A stretch of DNA of 37,577 bases from assembly GCA_001179505.1 (NCBI GenBank), contig CDMY01000642.1, positions 1 to 37,577 of the forward strand. Direction: 5' to 3'. Below, piece by piece: positions 1 to 21,477 of this stretch (position 1 is its first letter; every line of letters starts with the position of its first letter). Made by a program: the position numbers and the translations under genes. Below the pieces are notes generated by a model. The model was not told the DNA's origin and did no database searches. It saw only the letters and a program-made list of their open reading frames with translations. The stretch is from Vitrella brassicaformis CCMP3155 (Eukaryota > Protista > Chromerida).

Positions 1-850
1 CGAAGTGAGATCTGTGTTGACCACCCTTCATGATGCCATACATGGACAGAAACAACTTTGACTGACTGGCCAGTCCATCGGTCTTATTAAAGTAAAAGCA
101 CTCCTACTCTGGGACTTACCGCCCAGCAGATCCTCTATTCAGCTAACTACAGGAAAGGTCCTCACCGGCCTTTTCGCACAGCAACGACCTGTAGAGGACA
201 GTCAGCAACCGATTTCATCGGATGCCGCCCTTTTCTGCTTCTCACTGAGATGCCGAGTGACGACCGATGCGTATGAGCGACGAGCAAGTACGTAGAGGGG
301 ATGCATATGAGGCAGATGAAGTGTATTGTTGTGTTTGTATTGCCGAACTGTATTGTTTTGGGTTCAGATCTGCTTCCGATCTCTATCGCGTATCCACCGA
401 TTCAGCCATCTGTATCTCACGACACCGACATGCGTCTGGACTCTCCGCAGCAAGCCCTCCGCCGGTGCTTTTGGTCGGGATATCCGTGCCTCGCGTTTCG
501 AGCGGCGGGGTGGTGATGCGAAGTGGACACCTCGCATCGATGTTTGTCTATGTGGATCTGTGTCGCGAGTCCCGTCTACCCCTCCGACAAGGTGTGTACG
601 AACCGGAAGGAAGAGCAGACAGACAGGAGGACGCATACATGGAATGAATGGATGTGTACCGACCTTCTGCCGCACACACAACCGACCTGTATGTGGGTGT
701 TCCCGCATCCACGTGACCACCGCCTCCGCGTATGTGTGCAGCCGACGGCCGCGTCCACCGTATATGTGAGCATAAAGTGTTTGTTCTGCTCGTGCGCATG
801 TGTATTTCGACGGATGTGTTGTGTGTCCGTCGATGGGTGCGTGCGAGTGA

Positions 851-935
851 CTGTCTGCCTGTCTGACTGTCTGCCTGTCTGCCTGGATAGATGGATGGAT
901 GGATGGATGTGTGTATGGATGGATACATGGATGGG
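851..935. repeat. Compound microsatellite (CTGT/CTGC then GGAT)
   Basis: ctgtctgcctgtctgactgtctgcctgtctgcct is followed by (ggat)n-rich sequence. Confidence 0.85.
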
Positions 936-2035
936 AATCGATGGGTGCGTACGTATGGGAAGAAGGGCGTTGAGGAAGGGAACCCTTGCATAATGTGATG
1001 CATGCCGTCTGTAGCCAACGTACATGTCAGTGGAGCAGCCCAGGTGCTGCAGGCAGCCAGACATGTATGGGTGCATTGCAGAGGGGTTTGCCTTGAGCAG
1101 AGCAGCTGAGAACAGACGAGGATAGAGCAGCCCGAGGTGCCTGTAGCGCAGCTGTATTTCGTGTCGTGGTTGAGCAAGCTAGCCGTGTAGCCAGCGCTGC
1201 TAGCTAAACCGTTAGAACGGACACCACAGGATTGGAGTTTCCCAGCCTTTCGGCTTTGGCAGCCCTTTGTGGCGTTGTTGCGTATCGTGATTGGACTCTG
1301 CGTGCTGTTTCTTTGCTTCTCAACGGGTTCCCTCCCCTGTGTCTGTTCCCACTGTCGCTGAGGACATCACCTGGACGTCGTCACTCCCCTCTCCCACGTC
1401 ACGTCATCATTCACACCATCATCCCCCTATCCATTGCCACTAGAGCCAGTCACCCCTCTCTCTCACACCACACTTTACCCGCACGTACAGAGAGGGCGGT
1501 GGCGCGTTGGTGCTCCTTTTCTGTCTGTTGTCTGTCTGCCTCTGTCTTGTCACACATCTCACACACCCAGAGAGGCACAGAGGAGAGGATACGCCAACGT
1601 ATCAATGGCTAATTTGGAGGTGGCGAAGTGAAGAGGGTTTAAACGTGTTTTCAATGGCTAAAACAAGCCTCAAAATAGCTAAAACAAGCCTCAGAATAAC
1701 ATTTCTTGCCCCCCCNNNNNNNNNNNNNNNNNNNNNNNNNNNNNNNNNNNNNNNNNNNNNNNNNNNNNNNNNNNNNNNNNNNNNNNNNNNNNNNNNNNNN
1801 NNNNNNNNNNNNNNNNNNNNNNNNNNNNNNNNNNNNNNNNNNNNNNNNNNNNNNNNNNNNNNNNNNNNNNNNNNNNNNNNNNNNNNNNNNNNNNNNNNNN
1901 NNNNNNNNNNNNNNNNNNNNNNNNNNNNNNNNNNNNNNNNNNNNNNNNNNNNNNNNNNNNNNNNNNNNNNNNNNNNNNNNNNNNNNNNNNNNNNNNNNNN
2001 NNNNNNNNNNNNNNNCGCCCCCCCTCGGTCATCGT

Positions 2036-2173
2036 CTAAAGTTCTTAAAATTTCTCCTCGATTTTTTTCTTCATTTGCATTGTTTTAAATATTTTTCGCC
2101 TATTTGCGGGTTTTTAATATTTTTCGGCACATTTGGGACGTTTTAAAAAATGCCCGATCAGGGGAGGAGGCTT
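2036..2173 (+). repeat. AT-rich ~135-bp repeat, left copy of an inverted pair (partner 20957-21095)
   Basis: ...atatttttcggcacatttgggacgttttaaaaaatgcccgatcaggggaggaggctt aligns by eye to the reverse complement of 20957-21095. The inner ~65 bp are nearly identical. Confidence 0.85.
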
Positions 2174-2255
2174 CCACGAGGTGACCCATACGCTCCCCGT
2201 GCCCAACTTTGTAGAGCTGATGGAGACCGCATGCGCACACCCAGCAGCGTTTCGT

Positions 2256-2283
2256 GTTGTTGTTGTTGTTGTTGTTGTTGTTT
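2256..2283. repeat. (GTT)n/(AAC)n microsatellite
   Basis: About 9 tandem GTT units. Confidence 0.9.
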
Positions 2284-2475
2284 TTGTTGCCTGGCCTGGC
2301 TGAAGATTGCCGTTCAGGCTTGCTTAACACGAACAGACGAACTTCGTCGCCCGTTCATGTATCTGTCGATTTGGTAAGAAATTGTCTGTCGAGATGTAGA
2401 CAGTCTTTTTGTCATTTGTCTCTCGACGATCCTGTACGGCGTGGATCCTGTAAGCCGTCACGATGATAGCCCAGG

Positions 2476-5400
2476 TCAACACAGGAGCTCGGTCTTCTTT
2501 GGGTTGTCGGTTATCAGATAGAGGCCATGCTCGCTGCACTGCAAAGACTCCTGGCCTCCAGTGAACTGTTTGAACTCATTGTTGATGCGTTCCAAGTCCA
2601 CGGACGTCTTCCTTGCGTACACGGCCACGTGCCACTCTCGGCTCATGCGCTGAAAGGCCTCGCGCTCCTCGTCCTCATCATAGAGCTTGTCGACCTCCGA
2701 GTTCTCCACGGTGCCGTCCCCGTCCTGGCTGCTGCCCAGCGTCTCCGTCCACCACCCACATTGCAGGCCTCCCCAGCGGACCAGGTGACGCGTGCCATAG
2801 TGAGACACGGGGCCACCAATAGCTGTCTGCACAGCACGAGGGAGCTGCCGATCACCCTGTGATGTGTCGATGGCCCCCAAGAGCCTCAGCTCGTAGTCTT
2901 GCTCCAGGACTCTAATATCGGTGGCTGGAGCGGACGGGCGAAACGCTGCCGTGTTAGGGAAGCTGTCGTTGGTAAGGACTATGAGTGGGGGCGCTGAGAA
3001 GTCGGTGCCAGAAGCACTGCTGTCAGACTGCCGCAGCTGGCTGAGTGTCGCTTCCACCGAGGCGCTGCAGACGGGCGCGAGACGCGTGCGCACAGGGTCG
3101 GACGTGTTGTCCCACGGCACCCACGCCGCATCGGTTATGTCTCGACACAAAACCCCAACGCCACGACGCCGGAGGCTAGGGAATTGCTGGCCAGCACCGT
3201 TGCAGATCAAAGGCAGGCTGCCGAGTAGGGTGCCGATAACGTGGCCCTGTCGCTCCATGAATCCTGCAATCCCCTTCTTGCCGCGGTAGGCGAGCACCCG
3301 CCGCAGGACTGATGCGATGTTGTGACGCACTGACTGCGGGTTCACTGCATCGCACCCTTTCACGATGCCATTGTATACAGACGGGATGGTAAGAGCGATG
3401 CGCAGGAAGGTAGTGAGCACACCATCGCCGATGGGCAGATAGGGCATCGCCTGCGGACGTAAACCATGACGATCGATGAACTGCGATATGAGGAGTGGCC
3501 GCGTCTTGTCCGGCTTTGGTTTCATCTGTCCCCCCTGCGCCAACTGTGGAGAAGCTGCCTGCGGTGCGGGCGCCTGCTGCTGTGCGCCGGCTGCCGTGTG
3601 GTGGTCCAGGGAGACACTGGGCTCGCTCGAAGCCATGACCATGTGCTTCCATTTAGTGGCCGCGCACTCAGCAGGAACGTACATTCCCGTCCCCGCACAT
3701 CTGTTCACCTGAAGTGAGCAAACATAGGCACAAAGTGCAGATGGTCAGATGGTCCAGCACACCTTGGCATGCGTCATGTCTCGCTCCGTCGCGTCAAGGA
3801 ACTGCCGCATTTCGGAGATCATGTATCGGGGAAGGATTCGGCGGCTCTCATGGTAGAACAGCAGGTCTTGCCGGTAGTTGAGCACAATGCGCTCGATCTC
3901 TTCGAACCGTCCCGAGGGATCGATGATGTTCCACCGGTTTCGCTTTGTAATGTTGAATGATCGGAGGCCCCTGTAGCCTCCAGACAGCTCGACCTGCACA
4001 TCACCGTTGATCAACGGATATTATAAACACAGGTCGGTCGCCTACCATGTGCGATGAGTGCGAGTTGAACCGCAGTCTGCCTGCCTTCTGAACGCAGGGA
4101 GAGACACGAGCCGCGGCCAATCGGTCGATCCCGGGCACCTCCGTCACGTCTGGCACAGGCGGTCGAGGGACGTGCACAGCAGACACCCCGCCCTTCTGAT
4201 GCAATGGGCACATGCCGATGCACAGCCCCTTCGTTGGTAAGTAGTGTAAAGGCGGCATCGCCGTCCAGTACTTCAGTAGAGGGTGCGGCCCGCTCGTGAA
4301 ATAGTCAGGGCGCAGGCCAACGGAGAAACGCTGATAGATGTTGATAGCCGGAGACACGTACTTAAGGTCGATGACGTCAAGGATGTGCTCGAAGGGGACC
4401 CAGCAGGCCTCGTCGAGGAAGAAGTTGCACCCCAGCCCGCAGACATGCTATGTATACCCACAACGAACAAAGGTTTGAGACAGCACCTTTACCCGATCTG
4501 TGCCTGATGGCGCTTACTTCGGGCATGGCGTGATCGTTGAGGCTGTCGATTATGGCGCCTGCGCGGCCTGCACGCTTTCTGGCCATGAAAAAATTATACT
4601 CCTCTGTGACATCACGGAAGTGATGTGATAGGGAAGCGTCCTCCATCATCACCTGCAGCCGGGTGTCCCGAGCATGGCCGTCTTGTACGATAAACTCTGG
4701 CGCGCCCTCCCACAGCCTGCGAATGGACGGGTCGAGGGCCCTCCAGAGTGTGGAGCCGCACTCGAATCGCCGATATTTCAACAGCTCCCAGAAAGTCGCC
4801 GCCCATCGCCAGCGCCAGTCTGCTGCCGTCACGGTAGGCTTTGTCAGATATGTTCGGCAATCAGTGCAAACGATGAACGCTCGTATGTCTCCGTCGGATA
4901 GCTGGCGACTGATGTCACCGCAGCGTCCCGCGCGAATTGCCAGCTTGCCGCTGCGGAGGTCATGTGAGGTGAGGACACAGCCTTTCACGTGGATTGACGG
5001 ATGGCGCCGCTCTCCTGCGACGTCTATACGTCGCCGGCAGTTCTCGCAGCGCAGCAGATGAGGATCGATGTCCTGCGTGACCCCACCAGTCGTCGTCGAA
5101 GTCGATTGGTCGCCTTCAAAGAGTTGTCGCAGCGGGCAGTTCCGTGACGACTGTTGAGGGTGACTCAAGCGGTCGAAACAGTATCGACACGACGCCTGTG
5201 CGCTGAACTGCATCACGTCAGTTTCCTCTTCGTCACTCATCTCATGTGCCGGCTCTTCAGCCTCACCGACTGTCTCAAGTCCATCGTCCCCAAAGAGAAG
5301 GTATGGACAGTTGCGGGCGTCGTGATCCTCCTGATAACATATCCGGCAGCGTCGCCGTCGGGGCCCGTTTACCTCTCCTTCTGGCGGTGCTTGCGGACAG

Positions 5401-6341
5401 GTGCGAATGTCGTGCCCCGGCAAATGACATCGGCTGCAGCGACGCTGTCGAGCGGCCGTTTGTTCATGGTGGGCAGCCAAGTAAGACGGACACGTCCGAA
5501 TGTTGTGACCAGTGCGACCACAATGCGAGCAAGACTGGATCTGCGGATGGCGTCGGCGCCGTCGTTGTTGCGGCTCATCTTCAGCACCGTCTCCCTGCTC
5601 GTGGATACGCTGCATGTTCCCATACAAGCTGTGCATAAGCCGGTTCCAGCACTCTTTCAGCACCGCCCCAAAGCCACTGTCCGTAGCCACCCAGTCACCA
5701 AGATACGAGCGTCCGACACTCTCCCCCCTGCAAGACACCACACAACAAACGCAACATGTTTGCGTGCCATTCGTTCCAAAAGGATCCAATTTAGCGGCAT
5801 TCGCATGGTCCAAGGTCCATTTCATTGTCAAAGCTCTCAAACTCTTGCTCTCAGGACTCTCAAAGTCTCGCTCTCAAGGTCTCTCAGAGTCTCGCCCTCA
5901 GGGCTCTCAAAGTGTCGCTCTCAGGGCTCTCAAAGTCTCGCTCTCAGGGCTCTCAATGTCTCACTCTCAGGGCTCAGCCAAGCGCCTTCTCCCCTTACCA
6001 ACCCCCACTTCCCCCCACTGCACTGCAGCAAGCTGCCTCCCTCCCCTTCCCTTTCCCCGTCTTGAAAAAACTCTTGATGCCTGTCTGAAAAATCAGCAAT
6101 TGAGCGAAATGCGTGCAGGCACCTACGTGTTGGTGTTGTTGTTGTTATTGTTGTTGTTGTTCGATCGGTTGCGGCTATGGCCACGGCCACGCCCGCGGCG
6201 AGGGCCACGCGAACGACGACTTGAAATGGCCATAGCAGACACATAGAGACACAGAGAGACTCTGAGGCTCAAACACTGCAAGTACAAAATGTGTACTAGT
6301 TACCGTGTTGCTGGGGTGTGTGATTGCCGACGGCGACGGTT
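2476..6341 (-). CDS. Multi-exon gene: 3x CCHC zinc knuckle plus a Cys-rich domain of unknown function (possible Helitron-replicase N-terminal region). 5' end unresolved.
   Basis: Exons 5727-4518, 4447-4046, 3993-3763 and 3708-2476 are joined by GT-AG phase-0 introns (4517-4448, 4045-3994, 3762-3709) without stops. The joins read MPE|HVCGLGCNFF, SHM|VELSGGY and HAK|VNRCAG. The knuckles CSHCGRTGHNIRTC, CSRCHLPGHDIRTC and CRICYQEDHDARNC are exact C-x2-C-x4-H-x4-C. Upstream exons 6341-6304 and 6219-6127 are phase-compatible but less certain. An unspliced ATG at 5825 is an alternative start. Confidence 0.75.
5825..5975. repeat. 23-bp minisatellite, ~6 degenerate copies (probably intronic)
   Basis: Unit ctctcagggctctcaaagtctcg, for example at 5918-5940 and 5941-5963. 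Confidence 0.8.
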
Positions 6342-7229
6342 CTGTGGCAATCTCCGCTCCCACTTTCTCCTCCCTCCCGCCCCTCCTCTCTTGGTTGGGA
6401 ACCGCAGCAACGAAGGGATGTACAGAAACAGGAGGAACCCGTCGTGCAGCTGGTTGGTGTCGCCGTCGGGGCTGACCAGCGCGTCTGCCGCCTCCATCAC
6501 GTCAGCCATGTTGATCCTTGCTGGGGGGGGATCCTTGCCTCCGTCGGGATGCCCATGCGCCAGGCCGCCGAGTGCTGCTCCTCTGTGCGGTTCCTCAGGA
6601 GCGCCAGCCCTCTCTCCGGGATCGTCTTGGTCGGCCCACGCGTGCCGTTGCGTGCTGATGCGGCGCGGCGGCTGCCGCCCCCATTGTGGTCTCCCCCGTC
6701 GCCGCCCCCACCCGTGCCGTCGCCTGGCTCGTCGGGGTTCCCGCCATCGCCGCCTCCTCCTCTCGCCGCGACACGCCCTCGCCCCCCGCCTCGCCCCCTC
6801 CCCCGTCCTCTCCCTGACCCTCTGCCGCGTCATCTGCCGCCTCTGCCCCCTCTCGTGTTGCTGGCATGGTTGTTTGCGTTTGTTGGCGGCTGAGGGGGTC
6901 GTGGAGGTGGTTGGGACGGTTGAGAGGGCNNNNNNNNNNNNNNNNNNNNNNNNNNNNNNNNNNNNNNNNNNNNNNNNNNNNNNNNNNNNNNNNNNNNNNN
7001 NNNNNNNNNNNNNNNNNNNNNNNNNNNNNNNNNNNNNNNNNNNNNNNNNNNNNNNNNNNNNNNNNNNNNNNNNNNNNNNNNNNNNNNNNNNNNNNNNNNN
7101 NNNNNNNNNNNNNNNNNNNNNNNNNNNNNNNNNNNNNNNNNNNNNNNNNNNNNNNNNNNNNNNNNNNNNNNNNNNNNNNNNNNNNNNNNNNNNNNNNNNN
7201 NNNNNNNNNNNNNNNNNNNNNNNNNNNNN

Positions 7230-9319
7230 CCCGCTGGGGTGCCGACTGCGCACTGGAGAGGGGCGAAGTAGGCGGCCATCTTGTTTTTGTGCTGCATGCA
7301 CACTGCTCTCGTCACCCATCACCGCACTGCATCCCCCACCGCCACCGGCCGCACCTTGCCGTGCCTTTTCGTTAGTGCCATCAGATTCGCGGTGCCGAGC
7401 AGCTTGGTGACAAGCTGTGGGAGCTTCGCGCTCAGCAGCCGTCTGATGATCTTGGGGAAGGGGATGCGCTCCTCTCCCTGCCGGAGCCCATGCTTCGACA
7501 AGTTGAGGTAGCCCAGCAGATGCTCGAACCGCCAGCCGGACGGCCCTGGCGCTGCGCCTTTTGCTGCTGAGCGGAGTGCCTTCGCGAGCATCTTGGGTGG
7601 GACGTCGAGTGCCTCGGGCTCCACGTTGACGTCCGGCTTGGTGACGGGCGTGTTGCGTGAGGGGTGGAGGGCTTGCAGCTTGGCGTATGTCTCCTCCGTG
7701 GCTGGGGCGACTGGGGTGGAGTCCAGCTTCTTGGCCGCTCGTGTGAATTCCCCAAGCTCCACTAGCCGCTTGGCTGTCATGAACGCCCTCTGCGTCGCCG
7801 TGTCGTGGGTGGGGTGGGCGGGTGTGTGGTGGATGGCCGGTATCGTCTCGGTGCTCTTTAGTGCGAAATCGACCCCCTCGCGTAGCAGCAGCTCCCATTC
7901 CCCCTCCCAAAACAGCCGAAACCTCCGCTCCCACTTTCTCCTCCCTCCCGCCCCTCCTCTCTTGGTTGGGAACAGCAGCAACGAAGGGATGTACAGAAAC
8001 AGGAGGAACCCGTCGTCCAGCTGGTTGGTGTCGCCGTCGGGGCTGACCAGCGCGTCTGCCGCCTCTATCACGTCAGCCATGTCGATCCTTGCCTGTGGGA
8101 GGATCCTTGCCTCCGTCGGGATGCCCATGCGCCAGGCCGCCGAGTGCTGCTCCTCTGTGCGGTTCCTCAGGAGCGCCAGCCCTCTCTCCGGGATCGTCTT
8201 GGTCGGCCCACGCGTGCCGTTGCGTGCTGATGCGGCGCGGCGGCTGCCGCCCCCATTGTGGTCTCCCCCATCGCCGCCCCCACCCGTGTCGTCGCCTGGC
8301 TCGTCGGGGTCCCCGCCATCCCCGCCTCCTCCTCTCGGCGCGACACGCCCTCGCCCCCCGCCTCGGCCCCTCCCCCGTCCTCTCCCTGACCCTCTGCCGC
8401 CTCGTCTGCCGCCTCTGCCCCCTCTCGTGTTGCTGGCATGGTTGTTTGCGTTTGTTGGCGGCTGAGGGGGTCGTGGAGGTGGTTGAGACGGTTGAGAGGG
8501 CTGTTGAGAGGGCTGTTGGGATGGTGGGGCCAGGCCTGATGGGCGACCTCTGATTGCCACCCATATGTGTGTCGGCGGCCGTGCTGGTTGTCCTGGCGGC
8601 GCCCCTCTCTGCATCGGGATCCATACGCCCGCCTCATGCCTTGGGGCGGCGTTTCGCTGGGTTCTAGGGCGCCAGGCGAGTGTGGGGGCCGGTGGTGGTG
8701 CGTCTGGCTGCGTGGTGGGGCGCCGCTCCTGTCGTGTGTGGGGCGGAGGGTGTTGCGCGGGGGGTTGGGATCGATGCCGACACTCACCCGAGTCAGAAGC
8801 ACGAGGGTGGATTGAGTGTGGGTTCGATTCCGATAGGAGGTTTTCTTGCTGTGAGCCGCCCCGCTCCTCTTGGCTCTCGTCCTGGTCCTCTTGCCCCTCC
8901 CCGTACTGATAGTCTCCCTCCATGTACTCGCACTCGCCCTCAGGCGCTTCTCCCTCTTGCACGCTGCTTGAGGCGGGCTGTGGGGCGTGTTGCTGGCTCA
9001 CGGGTCGCCAGACGCTCCTGCTGGTCCTCGGTGGTGTGTCCGGGTGGGCGGCGGACCGTTGGGTGGGTGCGACGGCTTCTGGCCGGGCGGCTTGTTGGCT
9101 GGTGGGCCGCCAGACGCCTCTGATAGGTCCTGGTGGTGCGGGCGGCTGCGTGGCGGGCTGCTCAGTGGGGGCGGTTGCCTCTGGCGGGGCGGCTGGCCGG
9201 CTGACGGGCCGCCACTCCCGTCCGCTGCGCTGCTGGGGCTGCTGTGTGGCGGTCTCGTCTGTGGCTGCCTCCTCCTCGTCGATGGTCTCCAGCGCTTGAA
9301 AGGGGTTGGGCGACCGCAT
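7230..9319 (-). pseudogene. CRE-like retrotransposon ORF fragment: low-complexity/RGG region plus N-terminal part of the reverse transcriptase, cut by the gap
   Basis: AKRLVELGEFTRAAKKL...LQALHP...AAPGPSGWRFEHL...LMALTKRHGKVRPVAVGDAVR, then VTRAVC...FAPLQCAVGTPA. These are the RT domain 0-2 motifs typical of CRE-clade elements. No YxDD motif or endonuclease is visible in the window. Confidence 0.85.
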
Positions 9320-10066
9320 GGCTGATTGTCCGCCCCNNNNNNNNNNNNNNNNNNNNNNNNNNNNNNNNNNNNNNNNNNNNNNNNNNNNNNNNNNNNNNNN
9401 NNNNNNNNNNNNNNNNNNNNNNNNNNNNNNNNNNNNNNNNNNNNNNNNNNNNNNNNNNNNNNNNNNNNNNNNNNNNNNNNNNNNNNNNNNNNNNNNNNNN
9501 NNNNNNNNNNNNNNNNNNNNNNNNNNNNNNNNNNNNNNNNNNNNNNNNNNNNNNNNNNNNNNNNNNNNNNNNNNNNNNNNNNNNNNNNNNNNNNNNNNNN
9601 NNNNNNNNNNNNNNNNNNNNNNNNNNNNNNNNNNNNCTCCATCACGTCAGCCATGTTGATCCTTGCTGGGGGGGGATCCTTGCCTCCGTCGGGATGCCCA
9701 TGCGCCAGGCCGCCGAGTGCTGCTCCTCTGTGCGGTTCCTCAGGAGCGCCAGCCCTCTCTCCGGGATCGTCTTGGTCGGCCCACGCGTGCCGTTGCGTGC
9801 TGATGCGGCGCGGCGGCTGCCGCCCCCATTGTGGTCTCCCCCATCGCCGCCCCCACCCGTGTCGTCGCCTGGCTCGTCGGGGTCCCCGCCATCGCCGCCT
9901 CCTCCTCTCGGCGCGACACGCCCTCGCCCCCCACCTCGGCCCCTCCCCCGTCCTCTCCCTGACCCTCTGCCGCTTCGTCTGCCGCCTCTGCCCCCTCTCG
10001 TGTTGCTGGCATGGTTGTTTGCGTTTGTTGGCGGCTGAGGGGGTCGTGGAGGTGGTTGGGACGGTT

Positions 10067-10140
10067 GAGAGGGCTGTTGAGAGGGCTGTTGAGAGGGCTG
10101 TTGAGAGGGCTGTTGAGAGGGCTGTTGAGAGGGCTGTTGG
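10067..10140 (-). repeat. 12-bp in-frame VNTR (encodes QQPS) in the retroelement ORF
   Basis: gagagggctgtt x6 here, x2 at ~8494-8518 and x3 at ~13873-13908. Confidence 0.9.
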
Positions 10141-10407
10141 GATGGTGGGGCCAGGCCTGGTGGGCGACCTCTGATTGCCACCCATATGTGTGTCGGCGGC
10201 TGTGCTGGTTGTCCCGGCGCCCTTCTCTGCATCGGGATCCATACGCCCGCCTCATGCCTTGAAGCGGCGTTTCGCTGGATTCTTGGACGCCAGACAAGTG
10301 TGGGGGCCGGTGGTGGTGCGTCTGGCTGCGTGATGGGGCGCCACTTCTGTCGTGTGTGTGGCGGAGGGTGTTGCGCGGGGGGTTGAGATCGATGCCGACA
10401 CTCACCC

Positions 10408-11785
10408 GAGTGAGAAGCACGAGGGTGCATACCTGAGTGAGAAGCACGATGGTGCATACCTGAGTGAGAAGCACAAGGGTGCATACCTGAGTGAGAAGCA
10501 CGAGGGTGCATTGAGTGTGGGTTCGATTCCGATAGGAGGTTTTCTTGCTGTGAGCCGCCCCGCTCCTCTTGGCTCTCGCCCTGGTCCTCTTGCCCCTCCC
10601 CGTATTGATAGTCTCCCTCTATGTACTCGCACTCGCCCTCAGGCACTTCTTCGTCTTGCACGCTGCTTGAGGCGGGCTGTGGGGCGTTGCCAGCTCACGA
10701 GTCGCCAGACGCTCCTGCTGGTCCTCGGTGGTATGTCGGGGTGGGCGGCGGATTGTTGGGTGGGTGCGGCGGCTTCTGGCCGGGCGGCTGGTTGGCTGGC
10801 GGGCCGCCGGACGCCTCTGGTAGGCCCTGGTGGTGCGGGTGGCTGGGTGGCGGGCTGCTCAGTGGAAGCGGTTGCTTCTGGCGGGGCGGCTGGTCGGCTG
10901 ACGGGCCGCCACTCCCGTCCGCTGCGCTGCTGGGGCTGTTGTGTGGCGGTCTCGTCTGTGTCTCCCTCCTCTTCGTCGATGGTCTCTAGCGCTTGAAACG
11001 AGTTGGGCGACCGCATGGCTGGTTGTCCGCCCCTGGTGCGCTGAGGCCGCCGGGCCACCGATTTGGGGAGCTGGAAGCCTCTCGGGAGGTATATTTGCCG
11101 TTGTCTCCTGCCGTGCTGCCGCCCCTGTCGTCGCGTTGCGAGAGACATATTGGCGCGGGACGCCGTGCTGCTGGTCCTCGGGCGGGTGTTGTTGTTTTGC
11201 CTCCTCGGTTGTGCTGCCTCTGCCGCTCCATTCGACGGCCCGCTCGCCGCCAGTGTGGCCGCCTCCCTCCTGGTATTGACCACGTCGACCCACGCCCTCC
11301 CCCCCGCCTGCTCCGTGTTCTCGCTGGGCTGCTGGGACGGCTCTGTCNNNNNNNNNNNNNNNNNNNNNNNNNNNNNNNNNNNNNNNNNNNNNNNNNNNNN
11401 NNNNNNNNNNNNNNNNNNNNNNNNNNNNNNNNNNNNNNNNNNNNNNNNNNNNNNNNNNNNNNNNNNNNNNNNNNNNNNNNNNNNNNNNNNNNNNNNNNNN
11501 NNNNNNNNNNNNNNNNNNNNNNNNNNNNNNNNNNNNNNNNNNNNNNNNNNNNNNNNNNNNNNNNNNNNNNNNNNNNNNNNNNNNNNNNNNNNNNNNNNNN
11601 NNNNNNNNNNNNNNNNNNNNNNNNNNNNNNNNNNNNNNNNNNNNNNNCATACCTGAGTGAGAAGCACGAGGGTGCATACCTGAGTGAGAAGCACGAGGGT
11701 GCATACCTGAGTGAGAAGCACGAGGGTGCATACCTGAGTGAGAAGCACGAGGGTGCATACCTGAGTGAGAAGCACGAGGGTGCAT
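10408..11785 (-). repeat. 27-bp in-frame VNTR (encodes HPRASHSGM); two arrays, 10408-10510 and 11648-11785
   Basis: Unit gagtgagaagcacgagggtgcatacct. About 4 copies in one segment, at least 5 in the next (runs into the gap), and a single copy at ~8790-8815. Confidence 0.9.
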
Positions 11786-11875
11786 TGAGTGTGGGTTCCA
11801 TTCCGATAGGAGGTTTTCTTGCTGTGAGCCGCTCCGCTCCTCTTGGCTCTCGCCCTGGTCCTCCTGCCCCTCCCC

Positions 11876-13214
11876 TTATTGATAGTCTCCCTCTATGTAC
11901 TCGCACTCGCCCTCAGGCGCTTCCTGCACGCTGCTTGAGGCGGGCTGTGGGGCGCGTTGCCGGCTCACGGGTCGCCAGACGCTCCTGCCGGTCCTCGGTG
12001 ATGTGTCGGGGTGGGCGGCGGACTGTTGGGTGGGTGCGGCGGCTTCTGGCCGGGCGGCTGGTTGGCTGGCGGGCCGCCGGACGCCTCTGGTAGGCCCTGG
12101 TGGTGCGGGTGGCTGGGTGGCGGGCTGCTCAGTGGAAGCGGTTGCTTCTGGCGGGGCGGCTGGTCGGCTGACGGGCCGCCACTCCCGTCCGCTGCGCTGC
12201 TGGGGCTGTTGTGTGGCGGTCTCGTCTGTGTCTCCCTCCTCTTCGTCGATGGTCTCCAGCGCTTGAAACGAGTTGGGCGACCGCATGGCTGGTTGTCCGC
12301 CCCTGGTGCGCTGAGGTCGCCGAGCCACCGATCTGGGGAGCTGGAAGCCTCTCGGGAGGTATATTTGCCGTTGTCTTCTGCCATGCTGCCGCCCCTGTCG
12401 TCGTGTTGCGAGAGACATATTGGCGCGGGACCCCGTGCTGCTGGTCCTCGGGCGGGTGTTGTTGTTTTGCCTCCTCGGTTGTGCTGCCTCTGCCGCTCCA
12501 TTCGACGACCCGCTCGCCGCCGGTGTAGCCGCCTCCCTCCTGGTATTGACCACGTCGACCCACGCCCTCCCCCCCGCCTGCTCCGTGTTCTCGCTGGGCT
12601 GCTGGGACGGCTCTGTCGAAGGTCGCCACTCGTCGTCTTGCTCCTCCTGTCGTGCTGGGCCGTAGAGCTCCGGGTTGTTCGCCATCGCCTCCTCCATCTC
12701 CGCCATGCTGCCTGGCAGTGGGGGCTCCTCGATGCCGAGCTCTAGGTTGCGATTGAGTTGGGGCAGCTCGAGCAGCAGTGTGTTGGTGCCTGGCAGCATG
12801 AGCACGTCCTCTACTGCTTCGCCAGCGTCGTACTCGTCGGCTGCGTCGGCCCTCGGCGTTGCGATCCACGTGCTCGATAATGTGGGCGCGAAGCGGGAGG
12901 GTCCCTTCATCTCCTCCGGCCCCCTCAAGCACCTCGAAGGCGAATTGAGCGTGGCATTGTGGGCAGCGGTGTCCGTTTTGGTGGGTGTATGTCCTCAGCA
13001 GGCAGCGGATGCATGTGTCTGGGTGGCAGGGGAGGCGGTGCAACGCGTCGCCGTGTAGCTCTTCTGTACAGACAGTGCATAGCGCGCCGCCCTGAGTCTG
13101 CTGGCTCGGTTCGACGGCGTCTTGGCCATTGCCTTCTTGGAATAGCCGCCCGACACTCCCCGCGTAGTTGTCCCTGGCCTGTCTTGCTTCAGTGTCGCGG
13201 AGGTTGTACGGCAT
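11876..13214 (-). pseudogene. 5' end of the CRE-like ORF with an N-terminal RING-type zinc finger (frameshifted, nonsense-mutated copy)
   Basis: ATG at 13214 (MPYNLRD...), then CTVC...LPCHPDTCIRC...CPQC at 13079-12954. A +1 frame change near 12850 leads into DAADEYD...MRSPNSFQALETIDEEE, which is shared with the RT-bearing copy. This copy has TAA at 11876-11878 where another has TAC. Confidence 0.7.
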
Positions 13215-14472
13215 CACCCAGGCTCCCCCGAGTGTCGCCCCGACTGTCCATTTTCGCCGCAAGCTTCTTTTTGCATCTTGCCGTAGCCGCCTAGGGTNNN
13301 NNNNNNNNNNNNNNNNNNNNNNNNNNNNNNNNNNNNNNNNNNNNNNNNNNNNNNNNNNNNNNNNNNNNNNNNNNNNNNNNNNNNNNNNNNNNNNNNNNNN
13401 NNNNNNNNNNNNNNNNNNNNNNNNNNNNNNNNNNNNNNNNNNNNNNNNNNNNNNNNNNNNNNNNNNNNNNNNNNNNNNNNNNNNNNNNNNNNNNNNNNNN
13501 NNNNNNNNNNNNNNNNNNNNNNNNNNNNNNNNNNNNNNNNNNNNNNNNNNNNNNNNNNNNNNNNNNNNNNNNNNNNNNNNNNNNNNNNNNNNNNNNNGTT
13601 GCGTGCTGATGCGGCGCGGCGGCTGCCGCCCCCATTGTGGTCTCCCCCATCGCCGCCCCCACCCGTGTCGTCGCCTGGCTCGTCGGGGTCCCCGCCATCC
13701 CCGCCTCCTCCTCTCGGCGCGACACGCCCTCGCCCCCCGCCTCGGCCCCTCCCCCGTCCTCTCCCTGACCCTCTGCCGCCTCGTCTGCCGCCTCTGCCCC
13801 CTCTCGTGTTGCTGGCATGGTTGTTTGCGTTTGTTGGCGGCTGAGGGGGTCGTGGAGGTGGTTGGGACGGTTGAGAGGGCTGTTGAGAGGGCTGTTGAGA
13901 GGGCTGTTGGGATGGTGGGGCCAGGCCTGGTGTATTCACAATGTTGCCAACGCATTTACAATACCGCTTCGACTTGGGATAGTCTGTGACGAAGATGGCG
14001 AGCCCTCCTGGCCTCACCCCCTTTTTCGAACCGAACTATATAGTTGTTGTTGAAGCAAGTGCCTCGTGGTATCCTGCCTCTGATACCCCTTGAATGCTGC
14101 GTGTCGTCAAGAAAGAGGGCATTCCGCGATGAGGCCATCGTCCAACCCGCATAGTCCACGACTCCACGCTGATGGTTCGTACAGATGCCAGTCATGCAGA
14201 CGGGGATCTGGGCGGCCGAAGCTTTCAAGGACACGGTCATCGAGGAGAGGAGAGGCACCCACTCGTCCCGAGTTCGAACCCAACGCAGCTACTGAAAGCT
14301 ACGGCAATTTTATGGAAAAACTGCCTCGAGTTTACACCTGCCCTTCAACCGGTGCGCCAACGGTTGGCGTGATTGACCCGCGGAAAGCGCTCAGACATGC
14401 GGGACGCGGTCCGGGCGCAGGTGGAGCCACAAGTGCGGTCATTGATCTCTCCCTGAATAAGCACTTACTATT

Positions 14473-16468
14473 ATGAAGCATCATCGATGGGCCGGCGTAG
14501 GAGGTGAGAGGCTGGAAAGAACCACACGGGGCGGGGACATTGGACATTGTGTGAACACCAGACAATTTTTTCTTTTGGCTATCGCAATCTTGACGGTTTT
14601 CGCCTTCTTCGCCGCACGGCTGACCCAGAGATTTGTTGGTGACGTGGGGCTTCTTCGCGCTGGACGGCTGCGACAAGCCCACAAGGGCCATGAATTCATC
14701 AGAATGGAGATGCTTGAAGGACACACCGCGGTGACCCCTGCGGAGGAGTTCGAGAGCGCTTACGTCTCATTCTATAGCCGACCAATCCCGTCTGCCCTTG
14801 TCGACAAGTGGCGGCCCTATGCGGAAGCACAGAATTGCTCAACAGAGCCATCGCACTACGCAAATGCTGATCACCAGCTTGAGACTTTTCGCAACCTGCA
14901 GACATTCGCTAAGCCCGGCATCTTCAAATCAATGATCGAAAACGCGGCGAAAGCACCAAGGACTGTCCTCTGGCAGGTACCTCTCCCCTACGGCATGCGG
15001 CTTCATGCCCCCCATGCTCCGAAAAAAGACACGGATGAGTGGCATTCTGTCTGCTCTGTTCAGGTGAAGGAAGGCAAGTTGGCCCACGTCCGAGGAGACA
15101 TCCCTTTCGTAACCGCACCACCACATAGCACACACAAAGTATCAGCACGCATAAACCATCATACCTGTTCTTCGTTCCTGTATCTTGCCAACCCCAGTGG
15201 GGAAGTGGTACCTGGAGGAAGGAGTTGCTTGGACCCATTGCCGAGGTGCTGCCCGACATGCTCCTGACAACAAATCTTTTAGACGAACCGCGCGTGCTGC
15301 GGCCTGCGAATGAGAGCATCGGTCAACCTGACCGAATGAGATTCAGGGGCAGGAGCGCCGCTGAAACCATCAGGCCATCCTGCCTCAATCAGACAGCCGC
15401 TTATCAATCCATCGTCGGGTTCTTCGTCTCGCCGGTGACATTTGACGCCCGCCGGGGTTTCCTACCCATCTTCTCTCGCACTCGCGTGCCGCATTGCTTT
15501 GTCGACATCGTGTCTGCGTTCTATCCCAGTGAGTGGACTCCCGGAGACGCCCCGTTGCCCAGATGGGAGGATAAGACGGAGAAGCTGGTGTGGCGGGGAT
15601 CCAACACGGGATGCCAGTGGACTAATGCAGACGAGTTGCTGTGGAAATGTGAGAGGGGGAGACTTGTGAAGCTGTTCGGGCAGAATAACAAAGCCGCAAC
15701 TCTGAAGGATGTTGGCGACGCGATGCGGTCGCATGGTCTCCTGTCGGATCAGGATCAGTGGCCGTCGGGCGAGTGGGCATCATCGCGTGTGGGAGACATC
15801 TTCGATGTGGGTATGACAGGCTACGGGCAGTGCAACACGCCATCCATCTGCTCACAGCTGGAAGGAATTCTCGGGAGAGCCAAGCCGATACCCTTTATGC
15901 GCCATTTTGACTACAAATACGTACTGCACGTCGATGGTACGCCATGCATCTTCCCCCATCAGCTGCTTACGATATGACGATGAGTACATCTCCCACATAG
16001 GGAACTCGTACAGCAGGCGACTGGTCGTCTACTTGGGAAACATATCAATGAAACTTACGTTATAACAAGTCTCCCTAGACCTTTCTGCGTCTTCTTTTTG
16101 CAGGTCGGTCTACTCCGGTCCAACTCTCTCGTCTTCCTTTCGGTATCCTGCACTGGAAACGGACAAAGGAACGCGGTCAACCCTCTTTCAGCTTGCGCTC
16201 TCTGTATCCCTTTAAGACCGCTTTTGAAACATGGATGGACGGATGGCTACAGCCATGGGTGCACTTCATTCCCGTGTCTCCTTCCCTCGCTGATTTGCCT
16301 GCTAAGCTGATCTGGGCACTGGAGCACGACGGGGATGCGCGACGGATAGCTGAGAATGCCCAGAGGTTCGCCCAGAGATATTTGCGCCCCGTGGACTTTG
16401 GCTGTTATCTCGCATGGCTGCTGATCGAGTATGAGAGCCTTTTCAGACCCAGGCAGAGACCGGAATAG
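14473..16468 (+). CDS. Glycosyltransferase family 90 (CAP10-like) type II membrane protein, multi-exon
   Basis: N-terminal hydrophobic helix FFLLAIAILTVFAFFAA. Motifs WEDKTEKLVWRGSNTG, YKYVLHVDG|NSYSRRL, LLRSNSLVF, WLQPWVHFIPVSPSLADL, WALEHD..ARRIAEN and CYLAWLLIEY. GT-AG introns, for example 14977-15063. Confidence 0.9.
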
Positions 16469-17318
16469 TCCTCTTCACTACAGGGGGTATTAAAGCCGAG
16501 GAAACTTGACTTTGTCCATCCCACCGCAGGCCACAATACCCACAAGATCGTGATGAACAACGACAGCGACCACGAGACGCGCTTGTCGGTGAGGAGCCCC
16601 ACAGCAGGACTCGAGGTCGCCTTCCACTCTGCTGGAAGGGCATGAGAGGGGAGGGGTGGGTCGCTGACGGATAGGTAGAGCTCGGCAGACAGGTCGGGTG
16701 GGATGCCTGCCTTCGTAGATAGTTTTTGAGCCTTCTCTACTAATGTGATTTACGGGCACGAAGTCTCCTGCTAACGAACTACACCGGGAGCCAGCTGCGG
16801 CTGGCAACTTCCAGGCAGCACGTCAATTGCGACATGGTGCATCGTGCTTGCCGAAAACAAATTTGCGACGTGGGTGTCGCTCAACTGTATGTCTCTATGG
16901 GTCTGTGGTAGCACTGCATCGTCTTTTTGTGCGTCATGCATCACTCCGCTTAGTCACTGGAGCCGAGCCAGCCACAAGCACGGCGCCGGTGATGGACAGT
17001 CGCGTGCATGCACAGTCCTTTGCTGTTTATTCTATTTGATGCAACCAGCTAGCCCTGCTTTTATGTAAGACGGTCAACACGAAATGAAACGTTAACAATG
17101 TCCGAAGCACTTCATTTTTGCATCTCAAACCACGTTGCACTCAGTAGGCCGCGTCCACATATTAATCCAATCACATCGCATTAGTACGTCCCATTGCTCC
17201 TTCCGACATCGCGCCTATGTCCATCAGCTTGTGCTTCCGATTGTCACAGCCGGCCGGAGAGGACTGCAACAGATATTCATATCCATACTGAATGACGTTA
17301 TGCATTGCCAATCTTCCT

Positions 17319-20186
17319 TTACCCCTCATCTCCAGGGGCCTCAGCGGCCTCACAGTCAGCCGGAAGTGCAGGCTGCAAGACCACTCTGCCATCATGTCGT
17401 CTCTGAGACAGTCTGCTGAGACCGCCTCTTGTGCCTCGCCACCCTCCCACATTTCCCCCCGTCAGGCAACACAGGCAGTGGGTGGGCCTCTGCAACGCGT
17501 CCATGCCGGATGCGCACAGAGGGACAGACAGACAGATGAATGCATTTACGCAAGACCTGGCTGTACCTTCTCACCTGTATTAAACACAAGTTTGTCGAGT
17601 CTGACGGTGCTGGGCGGGCTGAACGCGATCAGGAAATACTTGAATGTCTCTGCGATGACGAAGCTCTCCATGGTGTTCGTCTGCCGCGGGGGGACCTTAA
17701 AGAGACAGGAAAGAGGCAATCCAATGGCCTTCCGTCTGCACCTGGTGCGCACCGCATAAGGATCAGCGAGAGCGGAAAAACCATGTGCTCCTTTTGCCCA
17801 TTTGATCATCGCCAGGAAGATTTTCCACGTCCAATTGCGGTACCGGACACCCCACTCGCGAACGGCCGCCGATTCTTCTTCCTCAGTGACAGTGGAAAAG
17901 ATGTATTCTTTTTGCCCGCTTGCATCGCTCGTGGCAGCCTTCGCCTGTCGGTCTTGGGTGAAATAGTGCGGCCTCCCCTGAAGCTCAATCATGTAGGCGA
18001 GGGACTCGACAGTCTCCGGCCGTAGAAGCGTGTTGCGCTGCGACATGTCTCGCTGAATGTCGGAATCGCTGAACCTGACTCCCTCGGGCGGCAGACCTGG
18101 ATTGACAAAGACATCTCACTTTACCGCGAGTCTTTGTTTTCTTTCTTACTTTCTCTCTGTACCGCTTTGAGTGAAGAAATACATGGAGACGCAAGTCTTG
18201 CATAGTTCGTCAGCAAGCCGCTCAAGAAAGGCTCCGTCTATTTTGTGGCACGCTGGAGCAAAGCTCCTGTCGTGGCAGGCGGCCTTTGGGGGCTCATCTG
18301 GCTGCCAGACGAGGGATGTCCGCGCCAGCAGCATCAGCATACCCGGAAGAAAACATGCCTAAAAAAAGGTCGAGACGAAATGCGGCTGCCCATTTGGCCG
18401 GATAGCCCACCAGATGGCCCATCCGTGCGCTTTTTGTTCTGCCCCGCTCCGACAGGTCAGCGACATACACGAGTCCTTGGCCACCGTAGTTAATCCGCCC
18501 CTCCCTGTCACCATATGTCTTGCTCCAGTCTGGCTGCGGCAGGGATGGAGGCCTGGAGGTCTTGGATACCACGTCGGGCAACCTGCGCAAAAAGCCCAGC
18601 AGCATCGCCCTCAGCAAGGCGTCTTGCTGGCCTGAGGGGCACACACACACACATTTAAATTGAACAAGAGATGGCCCCCCGAGACTCACGACTACCTGTG
18701 AGAATCCATTCTTTGGCGAGGTACTCATAGAACGAGTCCCCTCCGCCGCCCAGTGAGATCGTCCCCTTGTGTGTGGCCAAATCCTGCGGTTTGAGGTGGG
18801 TGGGGATGAGGCCATGCCTGGACACCTGTCTTCGGCGCTCGATCAGGTCGGTCGTAGCCTCCGCTGCTTCCGCATAGGAGCAATCACCTGTGAAGTGGCT
18901 ACGACGAGGGCCAAGGGGAATGAGCAAGATGGGCTATCTGCGCTTACCTCAGCACCTTCAACTCAAGTTGCACTGTGCCGATTTCTGAGCACAACAAGGA
19001 AACAATGCTGGTTGTGACAGTCCTTTTTTGCTGACCAGCGAGACATGATGCGCCGCCACGGTAAGTCCCCTTTCCGCTATCGAGAAGGACAGTAGATGTC
19101 TGTGGGACACCCACAAAGCGTCCGCCAGTCATCCACTCCTCGATGACAGGCCCACTTTCCGACCACTGTCTCGGAGTGACCGTAGGAGGAAACGATTTCA
19201 AGAGCCGCCCGCCCAGCGACACCGCCTCTTCCAGGACCCTATCCATTTGATGAGCCCGACGCTTCTCCTCATCGGTCATTTTGTCCTTTTCTTTCTTAGG
19301 AAGGGTCGGTTTCAGTAGCGAGTAGATACCCAAAAGGCCGCCCTATGACACAACATTAAGGTCAAGTCTGTGCACCGCACCAATGATTGCTTCATCTTCC
19401 CACCAGCTGCCGTATGGTTGTCTCAAAGACATTGGCGCTGTAGTGGCGATTGAATGAAAGATTGTCTGCCACCCATTGCAGCGCCCTGTCAAGCTCATCG
19501 TGCAGACCAGCATAGAAAAGAGTGTCCATTGAGTCGAGAATCATCACGCCGACCCCGCCCCAATTAGCCCGGCCTTTCCCATTTGACGGGTTGATTTCAT
19601 CACTGCCAAACGCGTGCTGCTCATACTCATGCCAAAACCATTGCAGATTGCGCCTCACGAACCTCCTGCGAATCTCGTTCTCTTCGCCCAGCCAATTTGA
19701 GAAGGACAAACACATGCGGCTCAGAAGAGGGCACTGTTTATAATTGTTGATAGCAGTGGAGGCGTCCATTTGAGATAATGACATGGCCACGAGATCGTCT
19801 TCAGACAGCAAATTCATGAGGTGCCTGGAACACTTCTGTGTGCGACGGATATCTGCCGGCGTGAGCTGTCTTCTTGTCACATTCGTCAACCGCTGTAGGA
19901 CATTCGGGGCTGGCGAAAGCTCTAAGGGTGGGTTGGGCGGGACTCCCACATGCGAGAAGGGAAGCCGGCTGCGAAGGAGGAAGCGCTGAAATCTGGATGG
20001 ATCTGTCGGCTCGTCACCGTGGCCGCGCGGGTGGGATGTGAGATTCATCACCATGACCACTACCATGGTGATCAGCATGAGGGCCAGACACAGTAACCTG
20101 GGGCGTGAGCTCCACCGTCTCTTGCCGTACATCCTCGTGATGTGCGGTAGAGGGAGCAACAACCTGCTACCAACGCGTCGTTTCAT
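17319..20186 (-). CDS. Class I alpha-1,2-mannosidase (glycoside hydrolase family 47), type II membrane, multi-exon
   Basis: Signal-anchor LLCLALMLITMVVVMVM. GH47 motifs DSMDTL, VFETTIR, EIGTVQLE, SLGGGGDSFYEYLAK, MGHL|ACFLPGML, SGLPPE, LRPETVES, MESFVIAETFKY and VFNT|EAHP occur in correct order across GT-AG introns. Confidence 0.93.
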
Positions 20187-20394
20187 AAGCCTTTTCCCAC
20201 TCGTTTTGCTGCTTCAGAGTTACATCATGATGGCTCGAGGAGGACCGGCCTCTTCTATTGGGATTAAAGGTCCAAGGATGAAAGGTGACGGTGTTGTTAT
20301 GGAGATAGAACCACAAATCGCCAGGGCGCTGCAGCCGTTGTGTCTCATTTGCGAGCGACTTCTAGCCACACGTACTTAGTTGGCTAGAGCTGGA

Positions 20395-20786: not shown

Positions 20787-20956
20787 TTAAGAGGAGCGAG
20801 ATGTCTCCTTTCCGTGCATCGAAGTAATCCGGGCTCTAATTACAGCATCCATATACCTTTTTCTGTTTTCATTCTCTGCTCCGTTTATGTTATTTGATCC
20901 GTTCCGAGCATGATCTCTTGTCTGATTATCCGCGAAGAAGTGATGACACCCCATCC

Positions 20957-21430: not shown

Positions 21431-21477
21431 ACCAATCAATTAATCAACCAGTCAATCAATCAACCAATCAATCAACT
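21431..21477. repeat. (TCAA/CCAA)n degenerate microsatellite
   Basis: accaatcaattaatcaaccagtcaatcaatcaaccaatcaatcaac. Confidence 0.75.

What the first reader, a model, noticed from the sequence alone, without database searches (positions are those of the whole stretch)
2476..5727. Spliced ~1000-aa gene: triple CCHC knuckles plus an uncharacterised Cys-rich domain, possibly a Helitron-type replicase N-terminus
Seen: three exact zinc knuckles, a fourth variant (CRYC..H..C), CENC/CTDC pairs, a Trp-rich block (WRWRWAATFWELL...LWRAL..SIRRLW), then FRDVT...LNDHAMPEHVCGLGCNF, HVPRPP..DRLAAA, GTGMYVPAECA and FTGGQESLQCSEHGLYLI. Three clean phase-0 introns preserve the frame, which suggests selection for function. 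Inference from memory, unverified: this motif order resembles the uncharacterised N-terminal region (P-x-x-C-P-W-G-C-x-x-F ... GGQ-x-x-x-x-C-x-x-H) of very large Rep/PIF1-helicase proteins in protists and invertebrates. I do not know of that domain being described with N-terminal gag-like knuckles.
Basis: partly seen in the sequence, partly recalled or inferred. Interest (0 to 1): 0.75.

Follow-up and report, generated by a model that had tools for sequence, protein, structure and literature searches.

The report
Solo front module of Helitron-like transposase
This is a real, intact four-exon gene of the alga Vitrella brassicaformis that encodes only the zinc-knuckle, cysteine-rich front part of a family of giant rolling-circle (Helitron-like) transposon proteins, without any of their catalytic domains, so it is either a domesticated or a recently stranded piece of a jumping gene.

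Summary
On the minus strand, 2476-5840, lies a four-exon gene with three short GT-AG phase-0 introns. It is the public Vitrella brassicaformis protein CEM27767.1, annotated as uncharacterised, which uses the same splice junctions.

Pfam, PDB sequence searches, an all-library HMMER search, word searches and metagenome or viral scans found no relative outside this genome.

Inside the genome it has distant paralogs of about 25% identity on contigs C242, C13, C314 and C541. A profile of them scores 67 bits on the protein; shuffled controls reach 2.4 bits at most. Motif order matches, and the position of intron 1 is identical.

In C13 the same open frame runs from this module into Helitron Rep motif I. 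Downstream lie the HUH and YLxKY motifs, a PIF1/AAA_30 helicase and a GIY-YIG nuclease. C314 shows the same order.

The window gene itself is a single-copy, highly diverged version that lacks all catalytic domains. It ends inside a Cys-rich cluster that the paralogs complete.

Its function is unknown; zinc-dependent nucleic-acid binding is an inference. Both structure models failed. Other notes of this scan describe full-length relatives on other DNA of this genome.

The parts
4518..5840 (-). Exon 1. The frame is open from 5840, with Met codons at 5825, 5636 and 5615; the public model starts at 5240. It holds the three knuckles, a variant knuckle, two CxxC pairs, the Trp-rich block and FRDVT.
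   Evidence: The CxxC...CxxC...W-rich order is collinear with the paralog front ORFs.
5307..5531 (-). Three exact CCHC zinc knuckles, at 5490-5531, 5397-5438 and 5307-5348.
   Evidence: Regex scan with shuffles. Pfam zf-CCHC_2 scores 22.1 bits, below its 27-bit cut-off. The paralog knuckle profile hits all three.
4448..4517 (-). Intron 1: 70 nt, GT..AG, phase 0. It follows a Glu codon, two residues before the first Cys of the C-x-x-G-C motif.
   Evidence: The position is the same in the C242 and C13 paralogs.
4046..4447 (-). Exon 2 (134 aa). This is the best-conserved core of the module: HVCGLGCNFF, HVPRPP, DRLAAA.
   Evidence: Own-genome search hits C242 (E 2e-4) and C13. The family profile scores 34.6 bits on this exon alone.
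3994..4045 (-). Intron 2: 52 nt, GT..AG, phase 0.
   Evidence: The junction is spanned without a gap by uninterrupted paralog ORFs.
3763..3993 (-). Exon 3 (77 aa), a continuation of the core (YRGLRSFNITKRNRW...).
3709..3762 (-). Intron 3: 54 nt, GT..AG, phase 0, holding an in-frame TGA.
   Evidence: The junction aligns with the contiguous paralog sequence around CGGTY.
2476..3708 (-). Exon 4 (410 aa plus the stop at 2476-2478). It holds CAGTGMYVP, a low-complexity linker, PPLIVLTND, Y..LVRWGG..GWW and GGQESLQCSEH. It ends where the paralogs continue into a Cys-rich cluster.
5833..5975 (.). A 23-bp minisatellite (6.2 copies) that abuts the upstream end of the open frame.

Best explanation
What is shown: the gene encodes a stand-alone, highly diverged copy of the roughly 1000-aa front module of a Vitrella family of giant Helitron-like proteins. 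The module runs knuckle, then two CxxC pairs, a Trp-rich block, the C-x-x-G-C / HVPRxP / DRLA core, and GQ-x4-C-x2-H. The complete relatives continue into a Rep-like HUH/two-tyrosine region, a PIF1-like SF1B helicase and a GIY-YIG nuclease. The window gene has none of these catalytic parts, so it cannot nick or transpose DNA by itself.

What is inferred: it is about 75% diverged from its relatives, yet it keeps more than 1000 open codons and three good introns. It has therefore been kept under coding constraint. It most likely acts as a zinc-dependent binder of single-stranded nucleic acid. That would make it either a domesticated protein or a trans-acting partner or regulator of the element family.
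For: Homology:
- Exon 2 hits C242 (E 2e-4) and C13 in a whole-genome six-frame search.
- A profile of the C242, C13, C314 and C541 copies scores 67.2 bits on P0001. One 50.6-bit domain covers P0001 residues 244-424, which span exons 2 and 3. A second domain of 13.3 bits covers residues 753-851.
- The best of 500 locally shuffled versions plus the reversed sequence scores 2.4 bits.
- Motifs align collinearly.
- Intron 1 is at the same position in the window gene, C242 and C13.

Link to catalytic domains:
- Frame C13:3973-5652 holds both the end of the module and Rep motif I.
- The HUH-like PHLH and INVQ..YLDK|Y motifs follow, with a conserved intron in five copies.
- hhalign against canonical Vitrella Helitron Rep picks exactly the INVE..YLHKY block, with E 0.012.
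- Language-model features of the C13 Rep ORF point to Helitron_like_N clusters, score 0.94 with 179-181 shared features.
- C13 scores PIF1 27.8 bits, AAA_30 27.7 bits and GIY-YIG 32.9 bits. C314 shows the same order.

Constraint:
- The gene is single copy.
- There are no stops in 1057 spliced codons. GC3 is 0.68 against GC2 0.48, and introns are 10 points lower in GC than exons.
- By contrast, the C13 and C314 copies carry in-frame stops and a nested insertion.
Against:
- The gene ends 12 residues after GQ-x4-C-x2-H. That is inside a Cys-rich cluster that the paralogs complete, which looks more like an accidental truncation than a tidy domain boundary.
- It sits 2.4 kb from a contig end. An assembly gap lies at 1716-2015, and gap-broken retroelement copies lie on the other side.
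- No ortholog is known, so selection cannot be measured.
- Both AlphaFold models are unusable, with pLDDT 38 and 36. Nucleic-acid binding is inferred only from the knuckles.
- Pfam does not call the knuckles above its cut-off.
Confidence: 0.5

Rival explanations
1. It is a recently stranded dead fragment. A separate, now extinct lineage of the same element family lost its 3' part (Rep, helicase, nuclease) by deletion or rearrangement. What remains is still open only because too little time has passed. The annotation is a gene-finder call on a relic.
For: - The end falls inside the Cys cluster that the paralogs complete.
- The gene lies next to repeats, microsatellites and assembly gaps near a contig end.
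- All other family copies examined are decayed or truncated; C242 also stops before Rep.
Against: - An active lineage should leave sister copies, and none was found with exons 1, 3 or 4.
- The two lineage-specific introns and the clear codon-position GC pattern fit a long-resident expressed gene.
Confidence: 0.3
2. It is a host gene that gave rise to the module. The front module began as a cellular zinc-knuckle gene family. A Helitron-like element captured a genomic copy, intron included, and fused it to its Rep-helicase. The window gene descends from the donor lineage.
For: - Helitron-like elements are known for stable capture of host domains upstream of RepHel (PMC11417382, read).
- The shared intron position is what capture of genomic DNA would give.
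- The window gene is single copy, intact and has more introns.
Against: - No cellular homolog of the module was found anywhere outside these elements.
- The window copy lacks the Cys cluster that follows in the elements, so it looks truncated relative to them rather than ancestral.
Confidence: 0.12
3. It is an ordinary lineage-specific cellular zinc-knuckle protein with no relation to mobile elements.
For: It is annotated as a plain uncharacterised protein. It has no Pfam domain beyond a sub-threshold knuckle.
Against: Its only detectable relatives are fused to Rep-like, PIF1-like and GIY-YIG parts, and they are present in several decayed copies.
Confidence: 0.03

Closest known systems
Helitron-like elements, especially Helentron/HLE2 RepHel transposases with long N-terminal extensions (HELIANO survey, PMC11417382)
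   Same: The paralogs of the window gene have Rep-type motifs in the canonical order (T-x-T-x-N, E-F-Q..G..P-H-x-H, N-V-Q..Y-L-x-K-Y), followed by a PIF1-like helicase and then a nuclease. Extra domains in the same ORF upstream of RepHel are known for HLE2. A GIY-YIG domain has been reported in one Sphagnum HLE2 family.
   Different: The window gene has no Rep, helicase or nuclease. Pfam Helitron_like_N does not detect the paralogs' Rep. Their nuclease is GIY-YIG, not the AP endonuclease of Helentrons. The front module matches none of the domains listed for HLEs (DUF6570, OTU, UCH, Herpes_teg_N, RPA).
Retroviral/gag-type CCHC zinc knuckles (Pfam zf-CCHC clan)
   Same: There are three exact C-X2-C-X4-H-X4-C units, each followed by Pro, in a basic context. 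This is the pattern that binds single-stranded nucleic acid in nucleocapsid and CNBP-type proteins (established knowledge).
   Different: The score is below Pfam's cut-off (22.1 against 27 bits for zf-CCHC_2). The aromatic residue after the first Cys is absent. No gag, protease or RT is attached. The neighbouring retroelement is a separate unit upstream.
Truncated transposase-derived proteins that keep only the DNA-binding front part, such as P-element KP repressor-type derivatives or domesticated transposase DNA-binding domains
   Same: It has a front, presumably nucleic-acid-binding, part of a transposon protein with no catalytic part. It is encoded by a single intact gene.
   Different: No evidence here shows repression or any other activity. 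The comparison is by analogy only.

Membership tests
Front module of the Vitrella Rep-PIF1-GIY-YIG giant proteins (copies on C13, C314, C242 and C541) | Collinear sequence homology to the module | tested here: met
   The family profile scores 67.2 bits on P0001, and shuffles reach 2.4 bits at most. Exon 2 alone scores 34.6 bits. hhalign gives E 1e-4 on the C-terminal block.
Front module of the Vitrella Rep-PIF1-GIY-YIG giant proteins (copies on C13, C314, C242 and C541) | Signature motifs in order: knuckle, CxxC...CxxC, W-rich block, C-[PG]-x-G-C, HVPRxP, DRLA, CGxT..Y, Y..L.RW...GWW, GQ-x4-C-x2-H | tested here: met
   Alignments.
Front module of the Vitrella Rep-PIF1-GIY-YIG giant proteins (copies on C13, C314, C242 and C541) | Shared gene structure: a phase-0 intron after Glu, two residues before the C-x-x-G-C motif | tested here: met
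   The position is the same in the window, C242 and C13.
Helitron-like RepHel transposase | HUH plus two-tyrosine Rep domain | tested here: not met
   No Pfam hit. Nothing downstream of the stop in the window matches the part of the family profile that follows the window gene's end, and the catalytic-domain ORFs of C13 give only chance-level tblastn hits in the window. In the paralogs the Rep motifs are present but are not called by Pfam.
Helitron-like RepHel transposase | PIF1-like SF1B helicase after Rep | tested here: not met
   It is absent from the window gene. It is present in C13 at 27.8 bits, over the Pfam cut-off; in C314 (25.4 bits, 26.7 with neighbouring matches in the frame) and C60 (25.0 bits) it scores at or just under the 25.9-bit cut-off.
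Helitron-like RepHel transposase | Multiple copies with defined termini and insertion sites | tested here: inconclusive
   The window gene is single copy. The paralog family has at least 8 loci, several at contig ends. Termini were not analysed.
CCHC zinc knuckle (Pfam zf-CCHC clan) | C-X2-C-X4-H-X4-C pattern and a score over the Pfam cut-off | tested here: inconclusive
   The pattern is met three times. zf-CCHC_2 scores 22.1 bits, under its 27-bit cut-off, and PF00098 was not reported.
Papain-like or USP-type cysteine peptidase (a lead from the protein atlas) | Catalytic Cys and His boxes in a recognisable fold | tested here: inconclusive
   Atlas scores are only 0.85-0.89 with low recognition. 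There is no Pfam or PDB sequence hit. The models were too poor for a fold search.

The most novel reading that the evidence does not exclude
The window gene may be a domesticated, catalytically empty derivative of a rolling-circle transposon protein. On this reading the host, or the element family in trans, uses its triplicated knuckles and zinc module to bind single-stranded DNA or RNA. It could act, for example, as a regulator or repressor of the Rep-PIF1-GIY-YIG elements. It would then expose the roughly 1000-aa front module as an independently folding functional unit, for which no relative was found outside this genome.
Probability: 0.3. Interest if true: 0.6.

Novelty: new variant of a known kind. 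Interest (0 to 1): 0.45.

Why it matters
Giant Helitron-like proteins carry long front regions whose role is unknown. Here that region exists on its own as an intact spliced gene, with its zinc knuckle triplicated.

This marks the module as a separable unit. It also gives a short, expressible construct for asking what the module binds.

If the gene is under selection, it would be a case of transposase-front domestication in a chromerid, a close photosynthetic relative of the apicomplexan parasites. If it is not, it is simply one more relic of an old element family.

Tried and rejected
Searches that found nothing outside this genome:
- Pfam on every exon and on all paralog ORFs gave only a sub-threshold knuckle.
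- PDB sequence searches were empty, both with single exons and with family profiles.
- Three word searches were run: exon 4, profile A2, and residues 18-225 of the C242 ORF. Nothing came back beyond one 312-aa Vitrella protein.
It returned only the protein itself and a repeat artefact. In hindsight exon 2 would have been the better query.
- Two metagenome scans and one viral-contig scan gave no relative. Two earlier attempts failed for lack of a conserved stretch.

Structure:
- AlphaFold of the whole protein and of the core domain gave pLDDT 38 and 36.
- I therefore ran no fold search, because its matches would be meaningless.

Readings dropped:
- I first read a Pfam Helitron_like_N hit on C314 as the Rep of this family. 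I dropped that reading. The hit lies in a roughly 10-kb nested canonical Helitron that interrupts the C314 copy.
- A papain or USP-like reading of exon 4, from the atlas and from eye-matching of 'His box'-like strings, found no support.
- A weak hit on C255 is a 33-aa match beside a gap, and the family profile does not see it.

Tools and limits:
- No self-joined spliced sequence was searched. Exons were searched by reference, and whole-protein comparisons used the database protein P0001.
- The exons were concatenated once, inside a script, only to count GC by codon position.
Full report
**What is there**

The window is contig C642 of a 72.7-Mb, 1064-contig assembly. An exact look-up shows it is Vitrella brassicaformis CCMP3155.

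On the minus strand an open frame runs from 5840 to 4518. It continues, after three short introns, to a stop at 2476-2478.
- The introns are 4517-4448 (70 nt), 4045-3994 (52 nt) and 3762-3709 (54 nt).
- Each starts with GT, ends with AG and lies between codons.
- Only the third is a multiple of three, and it carries an in-frame TGA. The frame is therefore continuous only after splicing.
- The exons encode up to 436 (from Met 5825), 134, 77 and 410 residues.

Exons are 56-61% GC and introns 48-50%. GC is 0.68 at third codon positions against 0.48 at second positions.

The all-library HMMER search returned the public protein CEM27767.1 / A0A0G4GEG6 (P0001, 862 aa, 'uncharacterized'). Its sequence uses exactly these three junctions. 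That model starts at 5240, downstream of the knuckles. The frame stays open for 200 more codons upstream, and that stretch contains three exact C-X2-C-X4-H-X4-C knuckles. Such a pattern occurs 0.09 times per shuffled window.

**No known family**

- Pfam reports only zf-CCHC_2 at 22.1 bits, under its 27-bit cut-off, and nothing for exons 2-4.
- PDB sequence searches are empty.
- The word search with exon 4 found nothing.
- The exhaustive HMMER search with exon 4 found only the protein itself and a repeat artefact.
- The atlas gave weak leads to papain-like peptidases, which nothing else supported.

**Relatives inside the genome**

Exons 1, 3 and 4 match only themselves in the assembly. Exon 2 also hits C242:101204-101584 (E 2e-4, inside a 984-codon open frame) and C13:2330-2722.

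These belong to a family whose copies are about 50% identical to each other. The copies lie on C242, C13, C314, C541 and, as a fragment, C952.

A profile built from the four larger copies (C242, C13, C314 and C541), with fragments handled as fragments, gives these results:
- It scores 67.2 bits on P0001.
- One domain of 50.6 bits covers P0001 244-424, which is exons 2 and 3 across their junction. A second domain of 13.3 bits covers 753-851.
- The best of 500 locally shuffled versions plus the reversed sequence scores 2.4 bits.
- Within the window the profile hits only exons 2, 4 and, weakly, 3.

The alignments are collinear from the C-x-x-G-C motif to GQ-x4-C-x2-H, at about 23-27% identity.

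The front ORFs of the paralogs begin with one CCHC knuckle. Two CxxC pairs about 60 residues apart and a Trp-containing stretch follow, as in exon 1.

Intron 1 of the window gene lies after a Glu codon, two residues before the first Cys of C-x-x-G-C. C242 and C13 have a GT-AG intron at exactly that place. Introns 2 and 3 are absent from the paralogs, whose ORFs run straight across those points.

**What the relatives are**

In C13 the plus-strand frames follow one another from 713 to 10327.
- Frame 3973-5652 contains the end of the module (WSRDHPGLWF ... GQAVARCHEH, then a Cys cluster). In the same open frame it continues to TYFYTVTLNM, which has the form of Helitron Rep motif I.
- The next frame holds EFQ...G.FPHLHGLL, the HUH form, and INVQIVD...YLDK.
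- In C13, C314, C60, C65 and C35 a GT-AG intron follows the second base of that Lys codon, and the next exon begins with its last base and then Y[AV]AGAEE. The spliced motif is therefore Y-L-x-K-Y, the two-tyrosine form.

Pfam does not call Helitron_like_N on these ORFs, nor does a PDB profile search. Three results still point to a Helitron-type Rep:
- hhalign against two canonical Vitrella Helitron Reps aligns exactly the P-[YF]-x-P...INV[EQ]...YLxKY block, with E 0.012 at low probability.
- The atlas places the ORF next to Helitron_like_N clusters, at score 0.94 with 179-181 shared features.
- The motif order matches the canonical one.

Downstream, C13 scores PIF1 27.8 bits and AAA_30 27.7 bits, both over their cut-offs, and then GIY-YIG 32.9 bits. 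C314 repeats the order, with PIF1 at 25.4 bits and GIY-YIG at 23.3 bits. C60 has Rep-like sequence followed by a PIF1-like segment.

The copies are old and broken:
- C13 has three in-frame stops in the helicase-nuclease frame.
- C314 is split by about 10 kb containing a canonical Helitron.
- C242 ends before Rep.
- Further Rep-like pieces sit at contig ends.

A GIY-YIG domain in a Helitron-like family has been reported once, in Sphagnum. Several other domains upstream of RepHel are known, but not this one (PMC11417382).

**What the window gene is**

It is a member of this module family, but a distant one, and it is only the module.
- It stops twelve residues after GQ-x4-C-x2-H. The paralogs go on at that point with CC.PP.D...VRPATC.AKVVR..CP.K...C.V.LC..HF and then Rep.
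- Nothing downstream in the window (2475 to 1, with an assembly gap at 1716-2015) matches the family profile or the C13 ORFs.

**How it most likely works**

Shown: it lacks Rep, helicase and nuclease, so it cannot carry out rolling-circle transposition.

Inferred: a sequence about 75% diverged from its nearest relatives cannot have kept 1057 open codons and three working-looking introns by chance. It diverged under coding constraint. No sister copy exists that would indicate a recently active lineage. I therefore favour a retained, expressed protein (about 0.5). Its three knuckles and Cys/His pairs would bind zinc and single-stranded nucleic acid, either for the host or in trans for the elements.

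The main rival (about 0.3) is a recently stranded fragment. In its favour, the end cuts through a Cys cluster, and the gene sits among repeats and gaps near a contig end.

A third reading (about 0.12) reverses the direction: a host gene family captured by the element, with the shared intron carried along.

**Limits**

- No relative outside Vitrella was found. The word search is bounded by length. The one exhaustive job used the less conserved exon 4, so absence elsewhere is not established.
- Both structure models were unusable, and no fold search was run.
Whole-protein comparisons used the database entry P0001.

**Earlier notes of this scan**

I read these after my own analysis. They describe, on other pieces of this genome, a Helitron-like protein with CCHC knuckles, unknown front domains and a GIY-YIG end. 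That agrees with what I found at C13 and C314.

**Verdict**

The object is a new variant of a known kind: a stand-alone, knuckle-triplicated front module of a little-described Helitron-like family. Interest is moderate.

Noticed in passing
L009 and L015 (G000:C13:713-10327, + strand): The longest family copy holds a knuckle and Cys-rich front module, Rep-like motifs, a PIF1/AAA_30 helicase and a C-terminal GIY-YIG nuclease, about 3100 codons in all. The last 3 kb is one frame broken by three in-frame stops, at 8009, 9101 and 9542.
   Followed up: partly
L015:1644-1761; also L018, L019, L020, L012: A conserved GT-AG phase-2 intron splits the catalytic two-tyrosine motif (Y-L-x-K | Y-[AV]-A-G-A-E-E) in five copies. 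In C13 the intron happens to be open in frame.
   Followed up: yes
L012 and L013 (G000:C314, about 12300-22500, minus strand): The C314 copy of the family is interrupted between Rep motif I and the HUH motif. The interruption is about 10 kb and carries a decayed canonical Helitron (Pfam Helitron_like_N and PIF1 hits with stops).
   Followed up: partly
window 6300-13955, minus strand: Several gap-separated (300-N) repeats of a proline-rich retroelement ORF share the stretch DMADVIEAADALVSPDGDTNQL. One ends in an RT-like start (LTKRHGKVRPVAVGD) at the gap. Pfam found no RT in the pieces tested. A first-reader note calls it CRE-clade with a RING finger.
   Followed up: partly
window 5833-5975, 2255-2289 and 6128-6161: A 23-bp minisatellite (6.2 copies) abuts the 5' end of the open frame. 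(TGT)n microsatellites of about 11 units lie on both sides of the gene.
   Followed up: no
window 19395-20186 (-), 28117-28818 (-), 34233-34886 (+): These are ordinary cellular gene pieces elsewhere in the window: glycosyl hydrolase family 47 (74.8 bits), a class I methyltransferase (39.2 bits) and an NYN domain (30.4 bits).
   Followed up: no
L016 (G000:C366:88000-97000): A canonical Vitrella Helitron has textbook Rep motifs (FITFTCNP, YQKRGLPHAH, YLHKYIYKG) and a PIF1 helicase. Its front part is different and unrelated, so two kinds of Helitron-like element coexist in this genome.
   Followed up: partly
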